The notes beneath the pieces were generated by a model. It searched no databases. It saw only the letters and a list, made by a program, of their open reading frames with translations, and had not been told where the DNA came from. This document shows positions 100 to 61,836 of a stretch of 64,000 nt of DNA, one piece after another. The stretch covers positions 62,001 to 126,000 of IMG/VR virus record IMGVR_UViG_3300042879_006196. One strand, written 5' to 3'. The translations under genes were made by a program, and so were the position numbers. The stretch's first letter is position 1, and each line of letters opens with the position of its first letter.

Positions 100-102
100 A
101 TG

Positions 103-125
103 ATAGGGGAATAAAATCCCCTATC
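103..125 (+). terminator. Hairpin GATAGGGG...CCCCTATC after the KTSC-like gene
   Basis: Inverted repeat; a related TAGGGGA-TAAAT-TCCCCTA hairpin occurs twice at about 6100-6175, after the paralog. Confidence 0.5.
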
Positions 126-165
126 TAAAATTTTCCAGGTTTAACAAAACCTGATTATAATGAAT

Positions 166-307
166 GTAAGAACGAAAGTTCTACAAGGTGACGACTCTGC
201 ACCTTGAGGGGAACGGAATTGCCCCTTGAAACCAGTAGCTCCTGTCAAATGGAGTGACGACATCTATTAAGTGCTTTGGGAATAGTTTCTAGAAAGAGGC
301 TATTCCC
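166..307 (+). ncRNA. Candidate structured ncRNA occupying a promoter cassette
   Basis: Starts at the ATG-equivalent position after TATAAT(156-161), has no ORF at that position, and folds into five consecutive hairpins. Confidence 0.55.
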
Positions 308-330
308 CCTCCAAGAGCCCCGCCGCCCGC

Positions 331-366
331 TTTTTCCAGGTTTAACACAATCTGATTATAATAGAT
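331..366 (+). promoter_or_regulatory. Representative early sigma70-type promoter for a leaderless transcript
   Basis: TTTCCA-N18-TATAAT-AGAT-ATG; no room for a Shine-Dalgarno; internal dyad CAG(G)TT-N6-AA(T/C)CTG. Confidence 0.8.
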
Positions 367-765
367 ATGACATTAGAACAACTGCAACAAATCTTTCCAG
401 GTGCTACGGCTGATACTTGGCATCAGCACCCAAACGGTGGTGGATGGGTGCAAAATACTGCAAAGGTATATGAAACTGCTTGGGTTGGCAAAGATGCCGT
501 AGTGTATGGGGATGCTGTGGTGCTTTGGAATTCTTCTATATCGGGGAATGCTAGGGTGTTGGCTGACGGGTATGGGTCTGGAGGAGAAGAAATGACCTTA
601 GAAAAAGCGTTGGAGCGGATTGAGTTCCTTGAGAACGCTCTGAACGGAGCGATTGGTTCCTGCATTAAGGATGAGGAATGTGATTTCACGAAAAAGCCAG
701 AACTGGTGGAATACATTAAGCAAAACTGGTTGAATGCATTAATCAAAGAAATAGATAATGAATAA
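367..765 (+). CDS. Hexapeptide-repeat-like protein fused to a second small protein (internal start at 592)
   Basis: WHQHPNGGGWV...VYETAWVGKDAVVYGDAVV pattern; GGAGGAG precedes ATG 592, whose peptide duplicates the 758 ORF. Confidence 0.75.
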   Translation: MTLEQLQQIFPGATADTWHQHPNGGGWVQNTAKVYETAWVGKDAVVYGDAVVLWNSSISGNARVLADGYGSGGEEMTLEKALERIEFLENALNGAIGSCIKDEECDFTKKPELVEYIKQNWLNALIKEIDNE

Positions 766-964
766 CATGACATTAGAAGAGGCATTGAAACGGATTGAGT
801 TCCTTGAGAACGCTTTAGACCAAGCCATTGACTTGGCAGTAATCCGAACTTGGGATTTAGGATATATTGTAGCAGGTTATGGTGGTGATAATGCAACTTA
901 TGACGTTAGAGAGCCACAAAGAGCTTTTCCTGCTCTAGTGGAATACTTGGAGGGGAAGGAGTGA
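758..964 (+). CDS. Hypothetical cassette protein
   Basis: ORF overlapping the previous stop; N-terminus paralogous to the 592 peptide. Confidence 0.7.
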   Translation: MNNMTLEEALKRIEFLENALDQAIDLAVIRTWDLGYIVAGYGGDNATYDVREPQRAFPALVEYLEGKE

Positions 965-1029
965 AAACCCCCTCCAAGAGTTTCGCTGCCCGCTTTTTCC
1001 AGGTTTAACACAATCTGATTATAATAGAT

Positions 1030-1248
1030 GTGATGTTACCTTACGAATATCTCAACGAAGTGCTTCAAAAGGGCGTTTGCCCAAATTGCAACAAGCCCAG
1101 CAAGTCTATTGACTTCCAATTCTCATATGGCGTGTACGCTGGTGTGATGTGCACTAAATGTGCCATCAATGGCTACAGAGACTCCTGCGGTCACAAGCGA
1201 CCAATGGGCACTAGAGCCGAGTACGAGTCCTTTGGAGAGGATTATTAA
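1030..1248 (+). CDS. Small Cys-rich (zinc-binding) cassette protein
   Basis: GTG at the cassette start position; CPNC and CTKC motifs. Confidence 0.75.
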   Translation: MMLPYEYLNEVLQKGVCPNCNKPSKSIDFQFSYGVYAGVMCTKCAINGYRDSCGHKRPMGTRAEYESFGEDY

Positions 1249-1311
1249 TCCCCCTCCAAAGGGGCGGCAGATCGTTTTTTCCAGGTTTAACACAATCTGA
1301 TTATAATAGAT

Positions 1312-1515
1312 ATGAGCAGTGATACAAAAGAATCGTTGGTTGTACTATCTCTCCTCGGAGGATTTGTTCCGTTGGTCTTTGCAATAGTGTGTCTCCCCAA
1401 GTATACGGAAGCCTCACTTTATTGGCTGAAGTTCGCCATGACCGCTTCAATTGTGTGTCCCGCAGTTGGATTTACAATTGACAGAGTGTGGAGAAAAGTC
1501 ACAAAAAATGACTAG
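1312..1515 (+). CDS. Small two-TM membrane protein
   Basis: Leaderless cassette ATG; two hydrophobic segments. Confidence 0.75.
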   Translation: MSSDTKESLVVLSLLGGFVPLVFAIVCLPKYTEASLYWLKFAMTASIVCPAVGFTIDRVWRKVTKND

Positions 1516-1723
1516 CATCTATGAAGAACTCAAAAACGCTGGTGTGGAAATCTCCAACTGGCAAAGTGACCTTTATTGTCCAAAAAATGCCCAGACTATC
1601 CCAATAGTCAAAAAGTATGAAAAAGAACACTATATTTCTACTTTCAAAAACTTAAACGACGGTCTCACTTGGTATGATGTTGCTTTTGCTTACGACCCTT
1701 ACTGGTCAAAATTAGGAAAGTAA
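1508..1723 (+). CDS. Hypothetical cassette protein (likely start MTSIYEE)
   Basis: ATG 1508 overlaps the previous gene end; part of ORF 1451..1723. Confidence 0.7.
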   Translation: MTSIYEELKNAGVEISNWQSDLYCPKNAQTIPIVKKYEKEHYISTFKNLNDGLTWYDVAFAYDPYWSKLGK

Positions 1724-1786
1724 TTCCCCTCCAAGGGGGCGGCAGACCATTTTTTCCAGGTTTAACACAATCTGATTATAATAAAT

Positions 1787-1981
1787 ATGAGCAATAAAAA
1801 GGCTTCAATCAAAAAACGAATAACAATGAATGGCAAAACATCAATTGTTGAAATAGATGTCTTCCAGCCCACTGGACATATGTCTTACTCAGGATTCGGT
1901 GCTCATGGAAGACAAAATCGAAAATCCGAGCGTCGCCAAAATCGAGCTGAAGCTCGCAACGTAATGAGAGGTGCATTTTAA
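1787..1981 (+). CDS. Small very basic protein
   Basis: Leaderless cassette ATG; GFGAHG followed by an Arg-rich tail. Confidence 0.75.
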   Translation: MSNKKASIKKRITMNGKTSIVEIDVFQPTGHMSYSGFGAHGRQNRKSERRQNRAEARNVMRGAF

Positions 1982-2106
1982 TGATTGACCCAAATGAATA
2001 CAAAGATGACTCTATATCTTTTGATGACGGTTCTCAATTAATTCTGCCCGACATAGAAATTTCTGATGATAATTGGGCATTTGGCACTCTAGATGTTGAA
2101 ACTTGA
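1981..2106 (+). CDS. 41-aa highly acidic peptide
   Basis: TAATG coupling with the previous gene; MIDPNEYKDDSISFDDGSQLILPDIEISDDNWAFGTLDVET (12 D/E, 1 K). Confidence 0.55.
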   Translation: MIDPNEYKDDSISFDDGSQLILPDIEISDDNWAFGTLDVET

Positions 2107-2127
2107 TGTATAATACTACAGTTCAGC

Positions 2128-2200
2128 CTCTCCATAGCTCAGTGGATAGAGCAACTGCCTTCTAAGCAGTAGGTCGGAGGTTCGAGTCCTCTTGGGGAGG
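2128..2200 (+). tRNA. tRNA-Arg(UCU), no encoded CCA
   Basis: Acceptor CTCTCCA/TGGGGAG, D arm GCTC, anticodon arm ACTGC-CTTCTAA-GCAGT, T arm GGAGG-TTCGAGT-CCTCT. Confidence 0.95.
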
Positions 2201-2271
2201 CTGAGCAATCCCCCTCCAAGAGGGTGGCAGCCCGTTTTTTCCAGGTTTAACATTTCCTGATTATAATAGAT

Positions 2272-2373
2272 ATGGAGTTACTAAAAAACATAGTGGTTGT
2301 TCTTGAAGCATTAGCAGCCATTGGGATTTTCATCGTTCTTGCTAAGATTTGGAAGCAAAACAGCAATCGCTAA
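2272..2373 (+). CDS. 33-aa single-TM peptide
   Basis: Leaderless cassette ATG; MELLKNIVVVLEALAAIGIFIVLAKIWKQNSNR. Confidence 0.7.
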   Translation: MELLKNIVVVLEALAAIGIFIVLAKIWKQNSNR

Positions 2374-2386
2374 ATCGCCACTTCCC

Positions 2387-2412
2387 CAGCTCCCCTCGAT
2401 TGAGGGGAGCTG
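2387..2412 (+). terminator. Perfect 11-bp hairpin
   Basis: CAGCTCCCCTC-GATT-GAGGGGAGCTG. Confidence 0.55.
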
Positions 2413-2477
2413 TTCCCCCTCCAAAGGCTTCGCCGCCCGCTTTTTCCAGGTTTAACACAATCTGATTATAATAGATA

Positions 2478-2735
2478 TTGAAAGTGATAGAAAAAACAAA
2501 GAAAGAAACAATAAAGTCTAGGAAAAAATATACAATTAATTATATTCAAGACCTTGGTAATCTTACTTTTATTGTTGAAGAAAAATTCAGTAGCTTAAAA
2601 AAAGCTATTGAGAGGGTGCAAGAAAAAGAAGCATTTTGGATACAAGAGTGTTTTGATGAAGATTTAGGAATATTTGAGCTCAAGCCCCGAATCGCTGGAG
2701 AGCTTGAATTACGATATTCTCTCAGATTTGAGTAA
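2478..2735 (+). CDS. Hypothetical cassette protein
   Basis: TTG start 1 nt from the canonical cassette start position. Confidence 0.65.
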   Translation: MKVIEKTKKETIKSRKKYTINYIQDLGNLTFIVEEKFSSLKKAIERVQEKEAFWIQECFDEDLGIFELKPRIAGELELRYSLRFE

Positions 2736-2811
2736 CACTCTGAAACTTAACCCCTCCAAAGGCTTCGCCGCCCGCTTTTTCCAGGTTTAACACAATCTGA
2801 TTATAATAAAT

Positions 2812-3231
2812 ATGACACTGAAAGATTTTGAGAAAGAGCTTCGCGTAAAAGTTTTAGCAACTTGGGGAACTGTTATAAAGCCTGCAAACTATGGAAAGTT
2901 TACAGATATTAAAGTGAGAGTTTCTTCAGGTGATGAGTTGTTTATTGTTGAAGTTAACTGGGAACATGATGAAAAGTGCTTCAATAAGTATGCTGATTTC
3001 ACAGGCGAATATTCAACGGATGTAATGCTCGATGAAACTGATATTTATGCTTCAGGGTGTTTTGCTCAATTCAAAATACATAGAAAAAGAAGAACTTTTG
3101 AAATAGGTTTAGTAGGCGAGCATTTTAATGATTTTGAATACTTAGGTTTCAAAAATCTAAAGTATGGAGTGCAATTGTATTTCGAAAATAGACAAGCTCT
3201 AGGTTCTTTCAGAGAATTTAGTGATGTTTAA
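2812..3231 (+). CDS. Hypothetical cassette protein
   Basis: Leaderless ATG; ORF fills the cassette exactly. Confidence 0.8.
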   Translation: MTLKDFEKELRVKVLATWGTVIKPANYGKFTDIKVRVSSGDELFIVEVNWEHDEKCFNKYADFTGEYSTDVMLDETDIYASGCFAQFKIHRKRRTFEIGLVGEHFNDFEYLGFKNLKYGVQLYFENRQALGSFREFSDV

Positions 3232-3292
3232 CCCCTCCAAAGGGGAGGCAGATCGTGTTTTCCAGGTTTAACACAATCTGATTATAATAGAT

Positions 3293-3490
3293 ATGAGCAA
3301 CGTGTTTGAACAAAGATTCTACAATGGTCAGGGTAATACATCAATTGAAAAATGCCGATACTTTGGAGAGTCTCATGCTTCTTATGAATGGCATAGACAA
3401 CTTGACCCAAGATGGACAGATGAACAGCAAAAAGCATATCATGAAGGCTATGATATGGTTCTTGAGGAATTGAAGAGAAACAAAAATTAA
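3293..3490 (+). CDS. Hypothetical cassette protein
   Basis: Leaderless ATG; ORF fills the cassette; AYHEGY-type C-terminus. Confidence 0.8.
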   Translation: MSNVFEQRFYNGQGNTSIEKCRYFGESHASYEWHRQLDPRWTDEQQKAYHEGYDMVLEELKRNKN

Positions 3491-3554
3491 ATCCCCCTCC
3501 AAGGGGGCGGCAGATCGTGTTTTCCAGGTTTAACATTTTCGAATTATAATAGAT

Positions 3555-3890
3555 ATGACACCAAGAGAAATTAAAAAGTTGATTGAGCGAATGGCAACTA
3601 ATGGTTTTACCTTAGTAGATGGATTCTTTCACCGACACATATACACTGGTAGAAAGTTGTATAGTGACGTGGTTAAGTTTGAGGATGCCTTGAATTGGCT
3701 CGAAAAGCCTGTTCTCACTGAAAGAATAAGAGACGAAGATATTATGGTGTTTATAAAAAATTATGGCAACGATGTAGCCGCTCGCTATGATGGTTGTTTA
3801 ATTTATGCGTCTATTAGTGGCTTTCGTGACAAAAGACTCACAGATGAACAAGTGGACGCCATTCATAAACAATGGCTTAAGTTACGCTGA
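3555..3890 (+). CDS. Hypothetical cassette protein
   Basis: Leaderless ATG; ORF fills the cassette. Confidence 0.8.
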   Translation: MTPREIKKLIERMATNGFTLVDGFFHRHIYTGRKLYSDVVKFEDALNWLEKPVLTERIRDEDIMVFIKNYGNDVAARYDGCLIYASISGFRDKRLTDEQVDAIHKQWLKLR

Positions 3891-3954
3891 TTTCCCCTCC
3901 AAAGGGGCGGCAGATCGTGTTTTCCAGGTTTAACACAATCTGATTATAATAGAT

Positions 3955-4581
3955 ATGATTCAATACAAGCAGTCGCAAAAACTAAAGAAGCTTCAATTGG
4001 AAAAGAACTTTGCAGAAGCAAACTGGCAAGAAGTTGAAGCGGAATGTAAAATCATCGACTCAGAAAATTCGGCGTTGCATAAAGAGAAATCTCAAGAACT
4101 TCAAAATCATATCAAAGCTATTGAATCTATTTGCAATCTGACTAAAGCCCAAAGTAAATACTTGAATGGATTCTATGCTCCAATCGTTTATACAAGAGAA
4201 GTTGATACTCTGCAAAGAATAAAAAGCAACTACGAAGGCATAATCAAGGAAAAAGAAAAACAAGAAATGTTGGCTAAACAGCAAGAATATCAAGCTAATT
4301 TGCAACAAAAAGCAATTATCTTTTTACTTGAAAATGGTAAAGTTCTTGGACAAGATTTTACTTTGGAAAATGCAATAAATTCTGCTAATAAATTGAAGTT
4401 TAAGCAACTAATTAAAGAGAAACTAGAAAGTTCAAGTGAATTCTCTTTTGACGGTGAAACTTGTGATGAAGATTGTGGTTGGGATGGTATGGGTCACAGA
4501 TGTTTCTGTGGTTGCCGAAGAGTAGATTGGGAATATAACGGCAATTTTGACAATATGTATATTTATGCCCAAGCATACTAA
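3955..4581 (+). CDS. Coiled-coil protein with C-terminal Cys cluster
   Basis: Leaderless ATG; CDEDCGWDG..RCFCGCRRV. Confidence 0.8.
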   Translation: MIQYKQSQKLKKLQLEKNFAEANWQEVEAECKIIDSENSALHKEKSQELQNHIKAIESICNLTKAQSKYLNGFYAPIVYTREVDTLQRIKSNYEGIIKEKEKQEMLAKQQEYQANLQQKAIIFLLENGKVLGQDFTLENAINSANKLKFKQLIKEKLESSSEFSFDGETCDEDCGWDGMGHRCFCGCRRVDWEYNGNFDNMYIYAQAY

Positions 4582-4643
4582 CCCCCTCCAAAGGGGAGGC
4601 AGATTGTTTTTTCCAGGTTTAACACAATCTGATTATAATAGAT

Positions 4644-4814
4644 ATGAGCGACAAAGAATTGAAGCTGATGATTGCTGGACAATGCCTCACGGGGTTGCTT
4701 GCAAATAATTCTCCTTGGAATAACGAATTAAGCCGACCAGCGCTTGTAGACTTTGCTTGGGGGGTTGCAACAGCTTTAATGGAGTTAAGTAAAGAGGAAG
4801 AGGAGAAGAAATGA
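4644..4814 (+). CDS. 56-aa phage protein of the AGQALxGLLAN...A..LM type
   Basis: Leaderless ATG; IAGQCLTGLLAN...AWGVATALM; ATGA overlap with the next gene. Confidence 0.7.
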   Translation: MSDKELKLMIAGQCLTGLLANNSPWNNELSRPALVDFAWGVATALMELSKEEEEKK

Positions 4815-5059
4815 CGCTAAGAGAGTGCATCAAACAAGAACTTAACTATCCCCGTAAAATGCATGGAAGTATTGTTGTTTACCGTGTAAGGCGGGATGGG
4901 GCAACTACATACACCTGTGCGGAGTGGGCTTTGCTTGAAAACAGACCACCCGTTGCAGAAATTTGGCGGGATTGGGGGAACAAAGAATGGCAAGTAAGTT
5001 ATTATAGAAAGCCAACAAAGCAAGAAAAAAAGGTGATAGATGCCTTTAGTTGTTTGTAG
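4811..5059 (+). CDS. Hypothetical cassette protein
   Basis: GAGGAG SD and ATGA coupling. Confidence 0.75.
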   Translation: MTLRECIKQELNYPRKMHGSIVVYRVRRDGATTYTCAEWALLENRPPVAEIWRDWGNKEWQVSYYRKPTKQEKKVIDAFSCL

Positions 5060-5202
5060 GGGAAGGATTAAGTCCCTCCCCCTCCAAGAGGGTGGCAGCC
5101 CGTTTTTTCCAGGTTTAACATTTTCTGATTATAATAATTATTTACAAATTTTTTTTCAAAAAATATTTTTTCCAGGTTTAACATTTTCTGATTATAATAG
5201 AT

Positions 5203-5637
5203 GTGATACACATTCACGCAACCAATCTAGGAGTCAGGTTTGGAACCTCTGACACTACTCTCGTTACTGCAAAAGACTATGATTGGGACTTCCAATTGTC
5301 TACCGAAGCCACTTCCAACGATAAGGACGTTATCGTGTTAAAAATGCCCGAAAACATGGCATTGGAACTATTCTGGGAATACTGCCGTAAAGAAGCATCG
5401 AGCCACCTTCTTTTGCACATTAGTGCTCTATTAGACGAAACTCCAAAAGAGCACATTGTTGAACAACTCCGTTGGTCAGTTGAAATACTGACTGATGATA
5501 GAAATAACAAAGTATTTGGGCGGGTAATCAAGCGTTCCGAGGCGTACATGGCAAAAGATATTGAGAATTTGCTTTTCTATAATCAAGAGCTTAAACTTTA
5601 TGCTCTATTGGATGAGGCTTATTTTTTCCAGGTTTAA
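5203..5637 (+). CDS. Hypothetical cassette protein
   Basis: GTG at the cassette start position; the stop lies inside the next promoter copy. Confidence 0.75.
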   Translation: MIHIHATNLGVRFGTSDTTLVTAKDYDWDFQLSTEATSNDKDVIVLKMPENMALELFWEYCRKEASSHLLLHISALLDETPKEHIVEQLRWSVEILTDDRNNKVFGRVIKRSEAYMAKDIENLLFYNQELKLYALLDEAYFFQV

Positions 5638-5835
5638 CATTTCCTGATTATAATAATTGCCATAGAAAAAAACTATGGCAATTATATCTAGTTTGCAAAA
5701 ATCTATGACAAATTTTCCAGGTTTAACAAAACCTGATTATAATATAGTTGCAAAAAATTAAAAAATTTTTTGGCGGCGGAGCCTTTGGAGGGGAAAAAAA
5801 TTTTCCAGGTTTAACATTTTCTGATTATAATAGAT

Positions 5836-61110: not shown

Positions 61111-61836
61111 ATGAATTCTGCAGATTTCGAAATTTTTTACAACTGGAACAACTCAAACAAAACAAACGACAAAATCCAATTCCGTACCATTCAGTCTAGA
61201 ATGTTACCATTACTTGAAAGAAAAGCTTTCACCAACTCTGAGATTGAAGAAATTCTGATTGCAGAGGGCTACAAGGAATCTTTGGTTAAAGAAGCTTTAA
61301 AAATCACTAACACTAAAGTTGCCTCTGAGCAAGAAGTGGAAATGAATGTTGAGGCAGCCAATGGAGTTCCCAAAAAATACTCAGACATTTCGCATAAGTT
61401 TGAAAGAGTTTTGCAAGCACATGGTCCAAGAAAGTTTGTGAAACTTATGACACAAGGCGAAAGCCCTCTGCTTAAAGTTTCTAGAAAGGAGCTTGAGACT
61501 TTTCAAAAAATTGCTGATGTAGCTTATGAAAATCCAGTGCAATTGCAAACTTTGCATGCATTTATGCAACCTTCCATAATTTCAGAACTTGCAGAAAACG
61601 TGTGTAGGGCAAGAAAAATTGCTCAAAAATGTACAGTTACTAAAGTTGCAAGTGGTAAATTCCAAATTTCACACAATGGCAAAAAAGTAGAAGCATCTAT
61701 CAAGCCTGTTGATTCAACGAGTGATAAATTTGCAAAATCAAATTATGGCGCATTTGGTTTTCCTGACGAATATGTAATACTTGCATACGAGCATAATTCT
61801 CCATATTCACAAATTAAAAAAGATTTAGGTCTTTAA
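61111..61836 (+). CDS. Hypothetical protein
   Basis: 241-aa ORF. Confidence 0.7.
   Translation: MNSADFEIFYNWNNSNKTNDKIQFRTIQSRMLPLLERKAFTNSEIEEILIAEGYKESLVKEALKITNTKVASEQEVEMNVEAANGVPKKYSDISHKFERVLQAHGPRKFVKLMTQGESPLLKVSRKELETFQKIADVAYENPVQLQTLHAFMQPSIISELAENVCRARKIAQKCTVTKVASGKFQISHNGKKVEASIKPVDSTSDKFAKSNYGAFGFPDEYVILAYEHNSPYSQIKKDLGL

What the first reader, a model, noticed from the sequence alone, without database searches (positions are those of the whole stretch)
166..307. One cassette carries a structured non-coding RNA instead of an ORF
Seen: the sequence begins exactly where ATG sits in other cassettes and forms back-to-back hairpins. These are GTAAGAAC-GAAA-GTTCTAC (GNRA loop), AAGGTG/CACCTT (185-205), GAGGGG/CCCCTT (206-227), GCTCC/GGAGT (238-255) and a 13-bp GGGAATAGTTTCT/AGAGGCTATTCCC (278-307). 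GTGACGAC occurs twice (188, 254). I recognise no known RNA family. Inference: an early phage sRNA, for example a decoy, protein sponge or antitoxin mimic.
Basis: partly seen in the sequence, partly recalled or inferred. Interest (0 to 1): 0.75.

Follow-up and report, generated by a model that had tools for sequence, protein, structure and literature searches.

The report
Small structured RNA gene in phage
One slot in a giant freshwater phage's long row of tiny early-type genes holds a gene for a roughly 150-base folded RNA instead of a protein, and a second phage lineage keeps the same five-hairpin fold through matched base changes, so it is a real new RNA family of unknown function.

Summary
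Window 166-307 follows one of 74 near-identical sigma-70-type promoters (132-161). It has no usable ORF.

The window lies in a ~350-kb lake-water jumbo phage that carries 23 tRNA genes, a tmRNA gene and a CCA-adding enzyme.

No Rfam 15 family, tRNA or tmRNA matches. I found a 66%-identical homologue in a second phage lineage (IMG/VR 3300007734_000743 and ENA lake contigs).
- It sits behind the same kind of promoter and starts at the same base.
- It keeps all five helices: 95% of pair cells are standard pairs, against 41-53% for slid controls.
- Nine pairs changed on both sides and none on one side only.
- The 10-nt loop of hairpin 3 (AACGRAAUUG) and the stems of hairpins 2 and 4 hardly change.
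- All five strain-level substitutions fall in unpaired positions.

So this is a selected, plus-strand, stand-alone RNA gene. Its function is not shown. It most likely acts in trans through the invariant hairpin 2-4 core. In one lineage it shares a cassette with tRNA-Gln, as T4 RNAC/RNAD sit among tRNA genes.

The GTGACGAC repeat is not conserved. No transcript data could be obtained.

The parts
102..134 (+). End of the preceding cassette (the 89-aa ORF ends at 99). It is a 9-bp hairpin, GATAGGGGA / TCCCCTATC (102-110 / 117-125), followed by TAAAATTTT. This is terminator-like and replaces the usual CCCCCTCC stem-loop.
   Evidence: Read from the sequence; ORF end.
132..161 (+). The cassette's own promoter: TTTCCA, 18 nt, TATAAT. 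It is one of 74 copies of TTCCAGGTTTAACA-N4-CTGATTATAAT, all on the + strand of the phage genome.
   Evidence: (17 copies in the window, 0 expected by chance).
164..169 (+). ATGTAA, a start codon followed at once by a stop. Only 3 of the 74 cassettes have this, and in none of them does an ORF begin at the promoter (this one, the 423-nt ORF-less one, and one with a Shine-Dalgarno leader). The homologue has it too.
166..184 (+). H1, the 5'-terminal hairpin GUAAGAAC-GAAA-GUUCUAC. It has 7 pairs, one bulged A and a GNRA loop. U165-A185 can add one pair in both lineages.
185..205 (+). H2, a 6-bp stem AAGGUG/CACCUU that is identical in both lineages. The loop is 9 nt here and 13 nt, unrelated in sequence, in the homologue.
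206..227 (+). H3, a 6-bp stem with three compensatory pair changes between lineages and a conserved G.U closing pair. The 10-nt loop AACGGAAUUG is conserved (AACGAAAUUG in the homologue).
235..258 (+). H4: outer pairs G235-C258 and U236-A257, and inner stem GCUCC/GGAGU (238-242 / 251-255) with a conserved G.U pair. All 7 pairs are invariant. The homologue carries a 14-nt extension of the stem inside the loop.
259..277 (+). A/U-rich single-stranded linker. Two of the strain-level substitutions (266 A>C, 267 T>C) lie here.
278..307 (+). H5, a 13-bp hairpin with loop AGAA. The homologue has a shorter hairpin at the same place, with four compensatory pairs at its base.
308..333 (+). C-rich tail CCCCCTCCAAGAGCCCCGCCGCCCGCTTTTT. 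This is the 'class II' form of the inter-cassette repeat. No canonical intrinsic terminator is called here, so the RNA's 3' end is undefined.
333..362 (+). Promoter of the next cassette (132-aa ORF, 367-765). It separates the RNA from the downstream gene.

Best explanation
Window ~166 to ~312 is a stand-alone gene for a ~150-nt structured non-coding RNA.

What is shown:
- The gene occupies one slot of a promoter/stem-loop cassette array, built like the PeSL (promoter-early stem-loop) arrays of T4-type phages, in a ~350-kb freshwater jumbo phage.
- It has its own sigma-70-type promoter.
- The first helix begins at the base where the other cassettes have their start codon.
- It has no conserved reading frame on either strand.
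- It folds into five successive hairpins that natural selection has kept as RNA on the + strand.

What is inferred:
- It is transcribed early and abundantly by the host polymerase. The 5'-terminal and 3' hairpins would stabilise it.
- Its 3' end is made by processing or weak termination in the inter-cassette repeat. In one lineage, RNase P-type cleavage ahead of the co-cassette tRNA-Gln would do this.
- It acts in trans, presenting the sequence-invariant core to a partner. That core is the H2 stem, the 10-nt H3 loop AACGRAAUUG and the H4 stem with its flanks.

My split for the partner is about 45% a protein (decoy or sponge, or a subunit of an RNP tied to the phage's large tRNA/translation module), about 25% base-pairing with a host RNA, and the rest something else.
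For: Promoter and position.

No ORF, and the highest GC among non-tRNA cassettes of this size. Metagenome gene callers also leave the 268-nt gap empty in 25 contigs.

Fold: z = -3.42 here and -3.14 for the homologue, 0 of 200 shuffles in each case.

Homologue: L115 2400-2553 and L145 1084-1237 sit behind the same promoter type and start with the same GUAAGA. A covariance model built from the window lineage alone finds it full-length at 51.6 bits, E ~4e-16.

Covariation on that alignment (66% identity):
- 94.7% of pair cells are standard pairs, against 41-53% when the partners are slid.
- Nine pairs changed on both sides and none on one side only.
- RNAalifold recovers the same five helices, with a covariation term of -4.5.
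- G.U pairs are conserved in H3 and H4, which points to the + strand.

Strain level: 23 contigs show 0-3 changes in the RNA. All of these (246, 266, 267), and the two in the other lineage, fall in loops or linkers. Divergence is 0.45% in the RNA, against 1.0-7.8% in the neighbouring ORFs.

Independence from neighbours: the downstream unit is a 132-, 140- or 71-aa ORF, a different ORF, or tRNA-Gln.
Against: - No transcript has been seen. The four runs labelled RNA-Seq cover the region evenly at low depth and are flagged as probably DNA.
- Only two independent lineages exist, so the covariation rests on essentially one comparison, on an alignment fitted to the model.
- No further homologue was found in 18 related jumbo-phage records, in a third lineage's cassette array, or in IMG/VR pattern scans. 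The RNA is accessory and rare.
- There is no canonical terminator after H5.
- Nothing identifies a partner. Complementarity to the phage's own genome is at chance level, the neighbours are ORFans and the host is unknown.
Confidence: 0.8

Rival explanations
1. It is a base-pairing (antisense) regulatory sRNA. The conserved H3 loop or the A/U-rich linker would be a seed that pairs with a host mRNA, or with a phage mRNA, to change its translation or decay.
For: A 10-nt loop is conserved while its stem covaries. A single-stranded A/U-rich stretch precedes a 3' hairpin, an arrangement typical of many bacterial sRNAs (general knowledge).
Against: Perfect complements of 11-13 nt in the phage genome occur at about the chance rate (36, 9 and 2 found; 23, 5.6 and 1.4 expected). 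There is no U-tail terminator of the Hfq-binding type. The linker is not conserved in sequence between the lineages. Host targets cannot be examined because the host is unknown.
Confidence: 0.2
2. It is a cis-acting leader, attenuator or insulator for a neighbouring gene, for example a structured 5' leader of the downstream ORF or a terminator block for the upstream one, and not a gene product in its own right.
For: No clean terminator follows H5, so transcription from 132-161 may read into the next cassette. In L145 the RNA and tRNA-Gln share one cassette.
Against: A full promoter lies between the RNA and the next ORF. The downstream unit differs in five contexts while the RNA stays the same. 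The upstream ORF already has its own terminator-like hairpin at 102-125. A terminator block would not need an invariant 10-nt loop and invariant stems.
Confidence: 0.07
3. It is an empty or decayed cassette: a recombination scar between inter-cassette repeats, or the remnant of a lost ORF, whose hairpins are fortuitous.
For: Nearly empty cassettes do exist at the end of the array (34-, 60- and 59-nt inserts at window 5136-5802). Cassette content is mosaic between strains.
Against: It is conserved at 66% identity in a second lineage with all helices kept by double changes. It diverges less than the flanking ORFs. It is GC-rich in an AT-rich genome. Fold z-scores are about -3.1 to -3.4 in both lineages.
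Confidence: 0.04
4. It encodes one or more tiny peptides. Candidates are the 13- and 12-codon frames that start at the two GTGACGAC copies, the 15-codon frame from ATG 160, and the 40-codon minus-strand frame 263-141.
For: These frames exist. Both lineages have a minus-strand frame of 40-49 codons.
Against: The 4-nt difference in H2 loop length shifts the + frames, and the GTG of the first mini-ORF is followed by a different sequence in the homologue. The minus-strand peptides align only weakly and with gaps (score 39), and they run through the + strand promoter. The ATG nearest the transcription start is followed at once by TAA in both lineages. The substitutions follow base-pairing, not codons.
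Confidence: 0.03
5. It is a DNA-level element: protein-binding palindromes, or hairpins in single-stranded DNA, for example at an origin or a recombination site.
For: Inverted repeats can also be kept by compensatory change when DNA is the target. The region lies in a recombination-prone array.
Against: Conserved G.U pairs in H3 and H4, and two more in H5, would be C.A mismatches on the other strand. The + strand folds better than the - strand. The element sits exactly one promoter-to-start distance downstream of a promoter in both lineages.
Confidence: 0.03

Closest known systems
Phage T4 RNAC and RNAD (species 1 and 2 stable RNAs in the tRNA gene cluster)
   Same: They are phage-encoded, roughly 100-150-nt stable structured RNAs with no ORF, found among or beside phage tRNA genes. 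Their function is still unknown (PMC9697503). Here, one lineage has the RNA in the same cassette as tRNA-Gln, and the phage carries 23 tRNA genes.
   Different: No sequence or structure relationship was tested or is apparent. T4 RNAC/RNAD are classed as late RNAs (PMC9697503), whereas this RNA has its own early-type promoter. In the window's lineage it is not next to a tRNA gene.
PeSL cassettes (promoter-early stem-loop) of T4-type phage hyperplastic regions
   Same: A composite terminator/promoter repeat flanks each small ORFan gene, and its copies line the variable regions where close relatives differ by indels (PMC2839356, PMC4122927). Here there are 74 copies on one strand, each with an upstream CCCCCTCC...GGGG stem-loop, and cassette content differs between strains.
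   Different: This phage has a DnaE-type polymerase and has not been shown to be T4-like. The start codon sits 4 nt after the -10 box, so the cassettes look leaderless. The cassette in question carries an RNA gene; I did not check whether the PeSL papers describe any such cassette.
Jumbo phage PhiKZ non-coding RNAs found by Grad-seq
   Same: They are ~100-180-nt structured, ORF-less RNAs of a jumbo phage, found outside any known family and of unknown function. That paper counts only 21 phage ncRNAs described up to then (PMC8545117).
   Different: Those were described from an intergenic space and from a 5' UTR and were seen experimentally. This one has its own promoter and comparative support, but no experimental detection.
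Protein-sponge and decoy RNAs (CsrB/RsmZ type), RNA anti-CRISPRs and ToxI-type antitoxin RNAs
   Same: These are multi-hairpin, ORF-less RNAs whose loops or repeats are what a protein recognises.
   Different: There are no repeated GGA loops, no tandem repeats, no CRISPR-repeat family match and no adjacent toxin gene.

Membership tests
Any Rfam 15 family | Score at or above the family's gathering threshold | tested here: not met
   The whole window at gathering thresholds gives only three tRNAs. For 100-400 at E<=10 the best hit is RAGATH-14 at 16.8 bits against 149.1. The homologue's loci have no match on the RNA at E<=1.
tRNA / tmRNA | Cloverleaf with acceptor stem, or a tRNA-like domain plus a tag reading frame | tested here: not met
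   ARAGORN finds 3 tRNAs in the window and 23 tRNAs plus 1 tmRNA in the genome. None is at 166-312 or in the homologue RNA.
PeSL-type regulatory cassette (context of the RNA) | A composite stem-loop plus sigma-70-type early promoter, repeated between small genes | tested here: met
   74 copies, all on the + strand, most preceded by CCCCCTCCAAAGGGG. The promoter scores 10 of 12 against the consensus.
PeSL-type regulatory cassette (context of the RNA) | The repeats coincide with insertions, deletions and replacements between close relatives | tested here: met
   Cassettes are joined in different orders and with different contents in related metagenome contigs.
PeSL-type regulatory cassette (context of the RNA) | The host genome is a T4-type myovirus | not tested
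   Only replication and nucleotide-metabolism genes were examined. The polymerase is of the DnaE type.
Hfq-type base-pairing sRNA | Rho-independent terminator hairpin followed directly by a U tract | tested here: not met
   No terminator-like site is called at 278-333. The T run starts 22 nt after H5.
ToxI-type (type III) antitoxin RNA or a phage mimic of one | Tandem direct repeats of about 34-36 nt, next to or mimicking the partner of an endoribonuclease toxin gene | tested here: not met
   TRF finds no tandem repeat in 100-400. The only direct repeats are 8-10 nt. The neighbours have no Pfam or PHROG function.
CsrB/RsmZ-type protein sponge | Several hairpin loops that each present GGA | tested here: not met
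   Read from the alignment: only the H3 loop holds GGA, and it is GAA in the homologue.
RNA anti-CRISPR (solitary repeat mimic) | Sequence and structure of a CRISPR repeat of the host | tested here: inconclusive
   No Rfam CRISPR-DR family matches 100-400 at E<=10. H5, the most repeat-like hairpin, has a different sequence in the homologue. The host and its repeats are unknown.
T4 RNAC/RNAD-like stable RNA | Co-transcribed with tRNA genes and released by tRNA-processing enzymes | not testable with these tools
   The RNA shares a cassette with tRNA-Gln(UUG) in L145/L146 but not in the window. Processing needs RNA data.

The most novel reading that the evidence does not exclude
The RNA is a working part of the phage's translation and tRNA takeover, or of its counter-defence. 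For example, it could be a decoy that soaks up a host tRNA- or RNA-targeting defence nuclease, or an RNA subunit that works with phage RNA-repair or tRNA enzymes. The phage carries 23 tRNA genes, a tmRNA gene, a CCA-adding enzyme fusion, RlaP-like proteins, and TyrRS and GatB genes beyond the record's ends. On this reading the invariant H2-H4 core is the recognised surface, and the RNA would define a new functional class of phage RNA.
Probability: 0.15. Interest if true: 0.8.

Novelty: new member of a known kind. Interest (0 to 1): 0.55.

Why it matters
Very few phage non-coding RNAs are known; one 2021 paper counts 21 (PMC8545117). Even the T4 examples still have no function (PMC9697503).

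This is a clean new case. The RNA gene has its own promoter, sits in a modular cassette and is exchanged like the ORFan genes around it. Its fold has comparative support, and it has a sharply conserved 10-nt loop that gives a direct handle for mutagenesis and pull-downs.

It also shows that PeSL-like cassette arrays outside the T4 group can carry RNA genes, so 'gene-less' cassettes in phage annotations deserve a second look. The limits are that the family is rare (two lineages), uncultured, and has no known host or partner.

Tried and rejected
- Known RNA families: Rfam at gathering thresholds and at E<=10, and ARAGORN, gave nothing.
- GenBank phages, blastn: no match to the RNA.
- IMG/VR exact or degenerate pattern scans (six): nothing for the 5' hairpin or the promoter. 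Three patterns built from the conserved core found only the one relative.
- Promoter pattern in genome contigs: two chance hits. In metagenome contigs: 21 loci from close relatives (90-99% identical); the one that covers the RNA is identical to it.
- Covariance models R1 and R2 against 18 related jumbo-phage records, a third-lineage cassette array and contigs reached through a neighbouring gene family: no further homologue. The 16.9-bit hit in G002 lies inside a coding region and is rejected.
- Transcript evidence: the only runs holding the RNA that are labelled RNA-Seq are 'probably DNA', with even low depth. No conclusion can be drawn.
- Targets in the phage's own genome: complementarity is at chance level.
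- GTGACGAC repeat: not significant and not conserved.
- Loop-loop or pseudoknot pairings (H3 loop with H4 loop or H5): checked by eye, and none is kept in both lineages.
- Small ORFs on both strands: not conserved.
- Neighbouring proteins: no Pfam or PHROG function.
- Complex prediction of the RNA with the syntenic 132-aa protein: the job was not folded, so it is no evidence either way.
- Host inference: the genome search does not draw relatives for a virus record.

Full report
**Context.** The window is bases 62,001-126,000 of a 347,392-bp IMG/VR virus record with 33.6% GC. The record carries 23 tRNA genes and a tmRNA gene, a DnaE-type polymerase, RecJ, ribonucleotide reductase, a DnaB-like helicase and an 883-aa protein matching tRNA nucleotidyltransferase (CCA-adding enzyme) families. 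Sequencing runs that hold it are lake-water metagenomes.

On the + strand the genome has 74 copies of TTCCAGGTTTAACA-N4-CTGATTATAAT. Seventeen are in the window, where none is expected by chance. A consensus scan reads them as TTTCCA, 18 nt, TATAAT, which is 10 of 12 matches to the sigma-70 consensus. Most copies are preceded by CCCCCTCCAAAGGGGAGGCAG...GTTTT. In 55 of the 74 a start codon sits exactly 4 nt after TATAAT. Related metagenome contigs carry the cassettes in other orders and with other contents.

This is the architecture described as PeSL (promoter-early stem-loop) cassettes in T4-type phages (PMC2839356, PMC4122927). I have not shown that this phage is T4-like.

**The observation.** The cassette between the promoters at 133-161 and 334-362 is 172 nt long. 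It has 49% GC and no + strand ORF above 19 codons. Gene callers used on 25 metagenome contigs also leave this 268-nt gap empty.

RNAfold gives five successive hairpins:
- H1, 166-184, with a GNRA loop.
- H2, 185-205.
- H3, 206-227.
- H4, 235-258.
- H5, 278-307.

The fold energy for 166-312 is -48.5 kcal/mol, against -35.8 +/- 3.7 for shuffles (z = -3.42, 0 of 200 as good). The minus strand reaches only z = -2.11.

G166 occupies the position of the A of ATG in the ORF cassettes. Just before it the sequence reads ATGTAA, a start codon followed directly by a stop. Only three cassettes have this, and none of them has an ORF starting at the promoter. The exact 5' end cannot be fixed from sequence alone. 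U165-A185 could extend H1 by one pair in both lineages.

The duplicated GTGACGAC is not meaningful. Nine per cent of shuffles contain a repeated 8-mer, and the homologue lacks it.

**Known families.** None fits. Rfam 15 gives nothing at gathering thresholds. At E<=10 it gives only a 16.8-bit RAGATH-14 alignment against a threshold of 149. ARAGORN finds no tRNA or tmRNA here.

**Relatives.** Sequence searches of GenBank phages and pattern scans of IMG/VR found nothing. A promoter-pattern scan of metagenome contigs, followed by look-ups of the flanking proteins, gave 23 contigs of the same lineage.
- The RNA shows 0-3 changes across them: 246 C>A in the H4 loop, and 266 A>C and 267 T>C in the linker. 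326 C>A lies in the tail, outside the RNA body.
- Divergence in the RNA is 0.45%, against 1.0-7.8% in the neighbouring ORFs.
- The RNA stays beside the upstream 89-aa ORF while the downstream product is 132, 140 or 71 aa.

The decisive find came from the DnaE protein. It led to IMG/VR record 3300007734_000743, with 83% amino-acid identity. The left end of that record holds the same kind of cassette array. Reading it shows, behind CCAGTTTTCACA...GTATAAT-AGAT, an ORF-less cassette starting GTAAGACGAAAATCTTACAAGGTG (L115 2400-2553). ENA lake contigs L145-L147 carry the same version with two loop changes. There it is followed in the same cassette by an 88-nt tRNA-Gln(UUG).

**Test of the fold.**
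- A covariance model built only from the window's lineage, with my hand-written five-helix structure (R1), finds the second lineage over its full length at 51.6 bits, E ~4e-16.
- On the resulting alignment (A5) the two lineages are 66% identical.
- 94.7% of pair cells are standard pairs, against 41-53% when the partners are slid by 1-3 columns.
- Nine pairs have changes on both sides: three in H3, two in H1 and four in H5. None varies on one side only.
- RNAalifold, run without my structure, predicts the same five helices.
- The H2 and H4 stems are invariant although the H2 loop changes from 9 to 13 unrelated bases and H4 gains a 14-nt inner extension.
- The H3 loop is AACGGAAUUG in one lineage and AACGAAAUUG in the other, while three of its six stem pairs switch.
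- G.U pairs closing H3 and H4 are kept in all sequences, which only makes sense for the + strand.
- The homologue alone folds with z = -3.14.

Two caveats apply. There are only two independent lineages, and the alignment is fitted to the model, so this is one strong comparison and not a statistical covariation test.

**Alternatives.**
- Coding is unlikely. The + frames are shifted by the 4-nt loop-length difference, the minus-strand frames align poorly and run through the promoter, and the ATG nearest the start is stopped at once.
- A cis leader or insulator is unlikely. A full promoter separates the RNA from the next gene, and that next unit differs in five contexts.
- A decayed cassette is contradicted by the conservation.
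- A DNA-level element is contradicted by the G.U pairs and the strand asymmetry.

**Function.** This remains inference.
- I found no targets by complementarity in the phage's own genome.
- There is no tandem repeat, no repeated GGA loop and no terminator with a U tail.
- The neighbours have no recognised domains.
- The runs labelled RNA-Seq that hold the sequence behave like DNA, so expression is untested.
- The RNA-protein complex job was not folded and says nothing.
- No further homologue turned up in 18 related jumbo-phage records, a third cassette lineage or contigs reached through a neighbouring gene family. The one weak hit is inside a gene.

The features that do speak are:
- its own strong promoter;
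- hairpins at both ends;
- an invariant H2-H3 loop-H4 core;
- cassette-like mobility;
- co-location with tRNA-Gln in one lineage, and with a tRNA-like relic nearby in both;
- a phage heavily invested in tRNA and translation functions.

I therefore favour a stable trans-acting RNA recognised through that core. A protein partner is more likely than an RNA one. Its biogenesis would be comparable to T4 RNAC/RNAD, whose function is also unknown (PMC9697503).

**Verdict.** This is a real, selected, structured RNA gene and a new family outside Rfam, of a known general kind (phage-encoded small stable RNA). Its mechanism is open.

Noticed in passing
Upstream of the window: L032:219-641 (genome 60019-60441): A second ORF-less cassette of 423 nt with 43.7% GC. 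Its longest internal ORF is 48 aa. It sits behind the same promoter and starts with the same GUAAGAAC (ATGTAA start-stop). It has no Rfam match at E<=1, and no divergent homologue was found among the loci fetched. It may be a larger non-coding RNA.
   Followed up: partly
L032:~1416-1510 (genome ~61216-61310); L145:~938-1021: A tRNA-like element sits at the end of the 132/140-aa ORF cassette and ends GGGUUCAAAUCCCACUGCUCCACCA. In L145 it has a 7-bp acceptor stem GGGGCAG/CUGCUCC with G3.U70 and ACCA, which resembles tRNA-Ala or tmRNA. In the window's genome the 5' strand is damaged, and in IMG/VR 3300007734_000743 only the 3' half remains. Neither ARAGORN nor Rfam calls it. In the second lineage it lies directly upstream of the RNA cassette.
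   Followed up: partly
Whole cassette array (genome ~1.2-68 kb; window 133-5831): In 55 of 74 promoter copies the start codon is 4 nt after TATAAT, leaving no room for a Shine-Dalgarno sequence. The mRNAs look leaderless, or the transcription start is unusually close to the -10 box. The three cassettes that do not start an ORF there all begin ATGTAAGA.
   Followed up: partly
window:5107-5831: The array ends with five promoter copies in 725 bp. Three enclose only 34, 60 and 59 nt. One of these inserts is a perfect 10-bp hairpin (ATTGCCATAG/CTATGGCAAT). Another carries an inverted copy of the inter-cassette motif (GGCGGCGGAGCCTTTGGAGGGG).
   Followed up: no
Inter-cassette repeats, e.g. window 308-333, 968-996, 2415-2443 versus 1250-1278: The cassette ends come in two forms. 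Class I is CCCCCTCCAAAGGGGAGGCAG, which is self-pairing. Class II is CCCCCTCCAAGRGCYYCGCCGCCCGC, where the C run instead pairs with a G run further upstream, as in H5 of the RNA.
   Followed up: no
L027:1236-8258 (a metagenome contig that spans the record's end and start): About 7 kb lies between the last and first bases of the virus record. It encodes GatB, a class I Tyr/Trp-type tRNA synthetase, a secretin-N-domain protein and a DUF4379 protein. The 'provirus' label and the record's ends may come from trimming these host-like genes, and the phage is probably ~355 kb (longest contig 356,595 bp).
   Followed up: partly
window:1787-2201 and window:8505-8654: tRNA-Arg(UCU) lies inside an ORF cassette, after two small ORFs. 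tRNA-Met and tRNA-Glu lie just past the array. tRNA genes are therefore scattered through the early-type region as well as in the main cluster at genome 171-173 kb.
   Followed up: no
window:15823-18474 (-): An 883-aa protein whose residues 383-801 match tRNA nucleotidyltransferase (CCA-adding) families. A homologue in a related contig has PolyA_pol and HD domains. It carries about 380 extra N-terminal residues of unknown function.
   Followed up: no
window:5832 onward and L032:2030-2296: The 89-aa ORF just upstream of the RNA (MGKNHKIK...) appears to have a paralogue at the very end of the array (MVKNHKIK...). The region there aligns at about 67-74% nucleotide identity. The 55-56%-identical proteins found may correspond to it, but I did not compare them.
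   Followed up: partly
Runs X19, X20, X25 and X26, laid on L032: These runs are labelled 'METAGENOMIC RNA-Seq' but cover the phage evenly at low depth and are flagged as probably DNA. The only strong peak (L032 4335-4531) is the tRNA-Arg gene, where contigs from many organisms pile up.
   Followed up: yes
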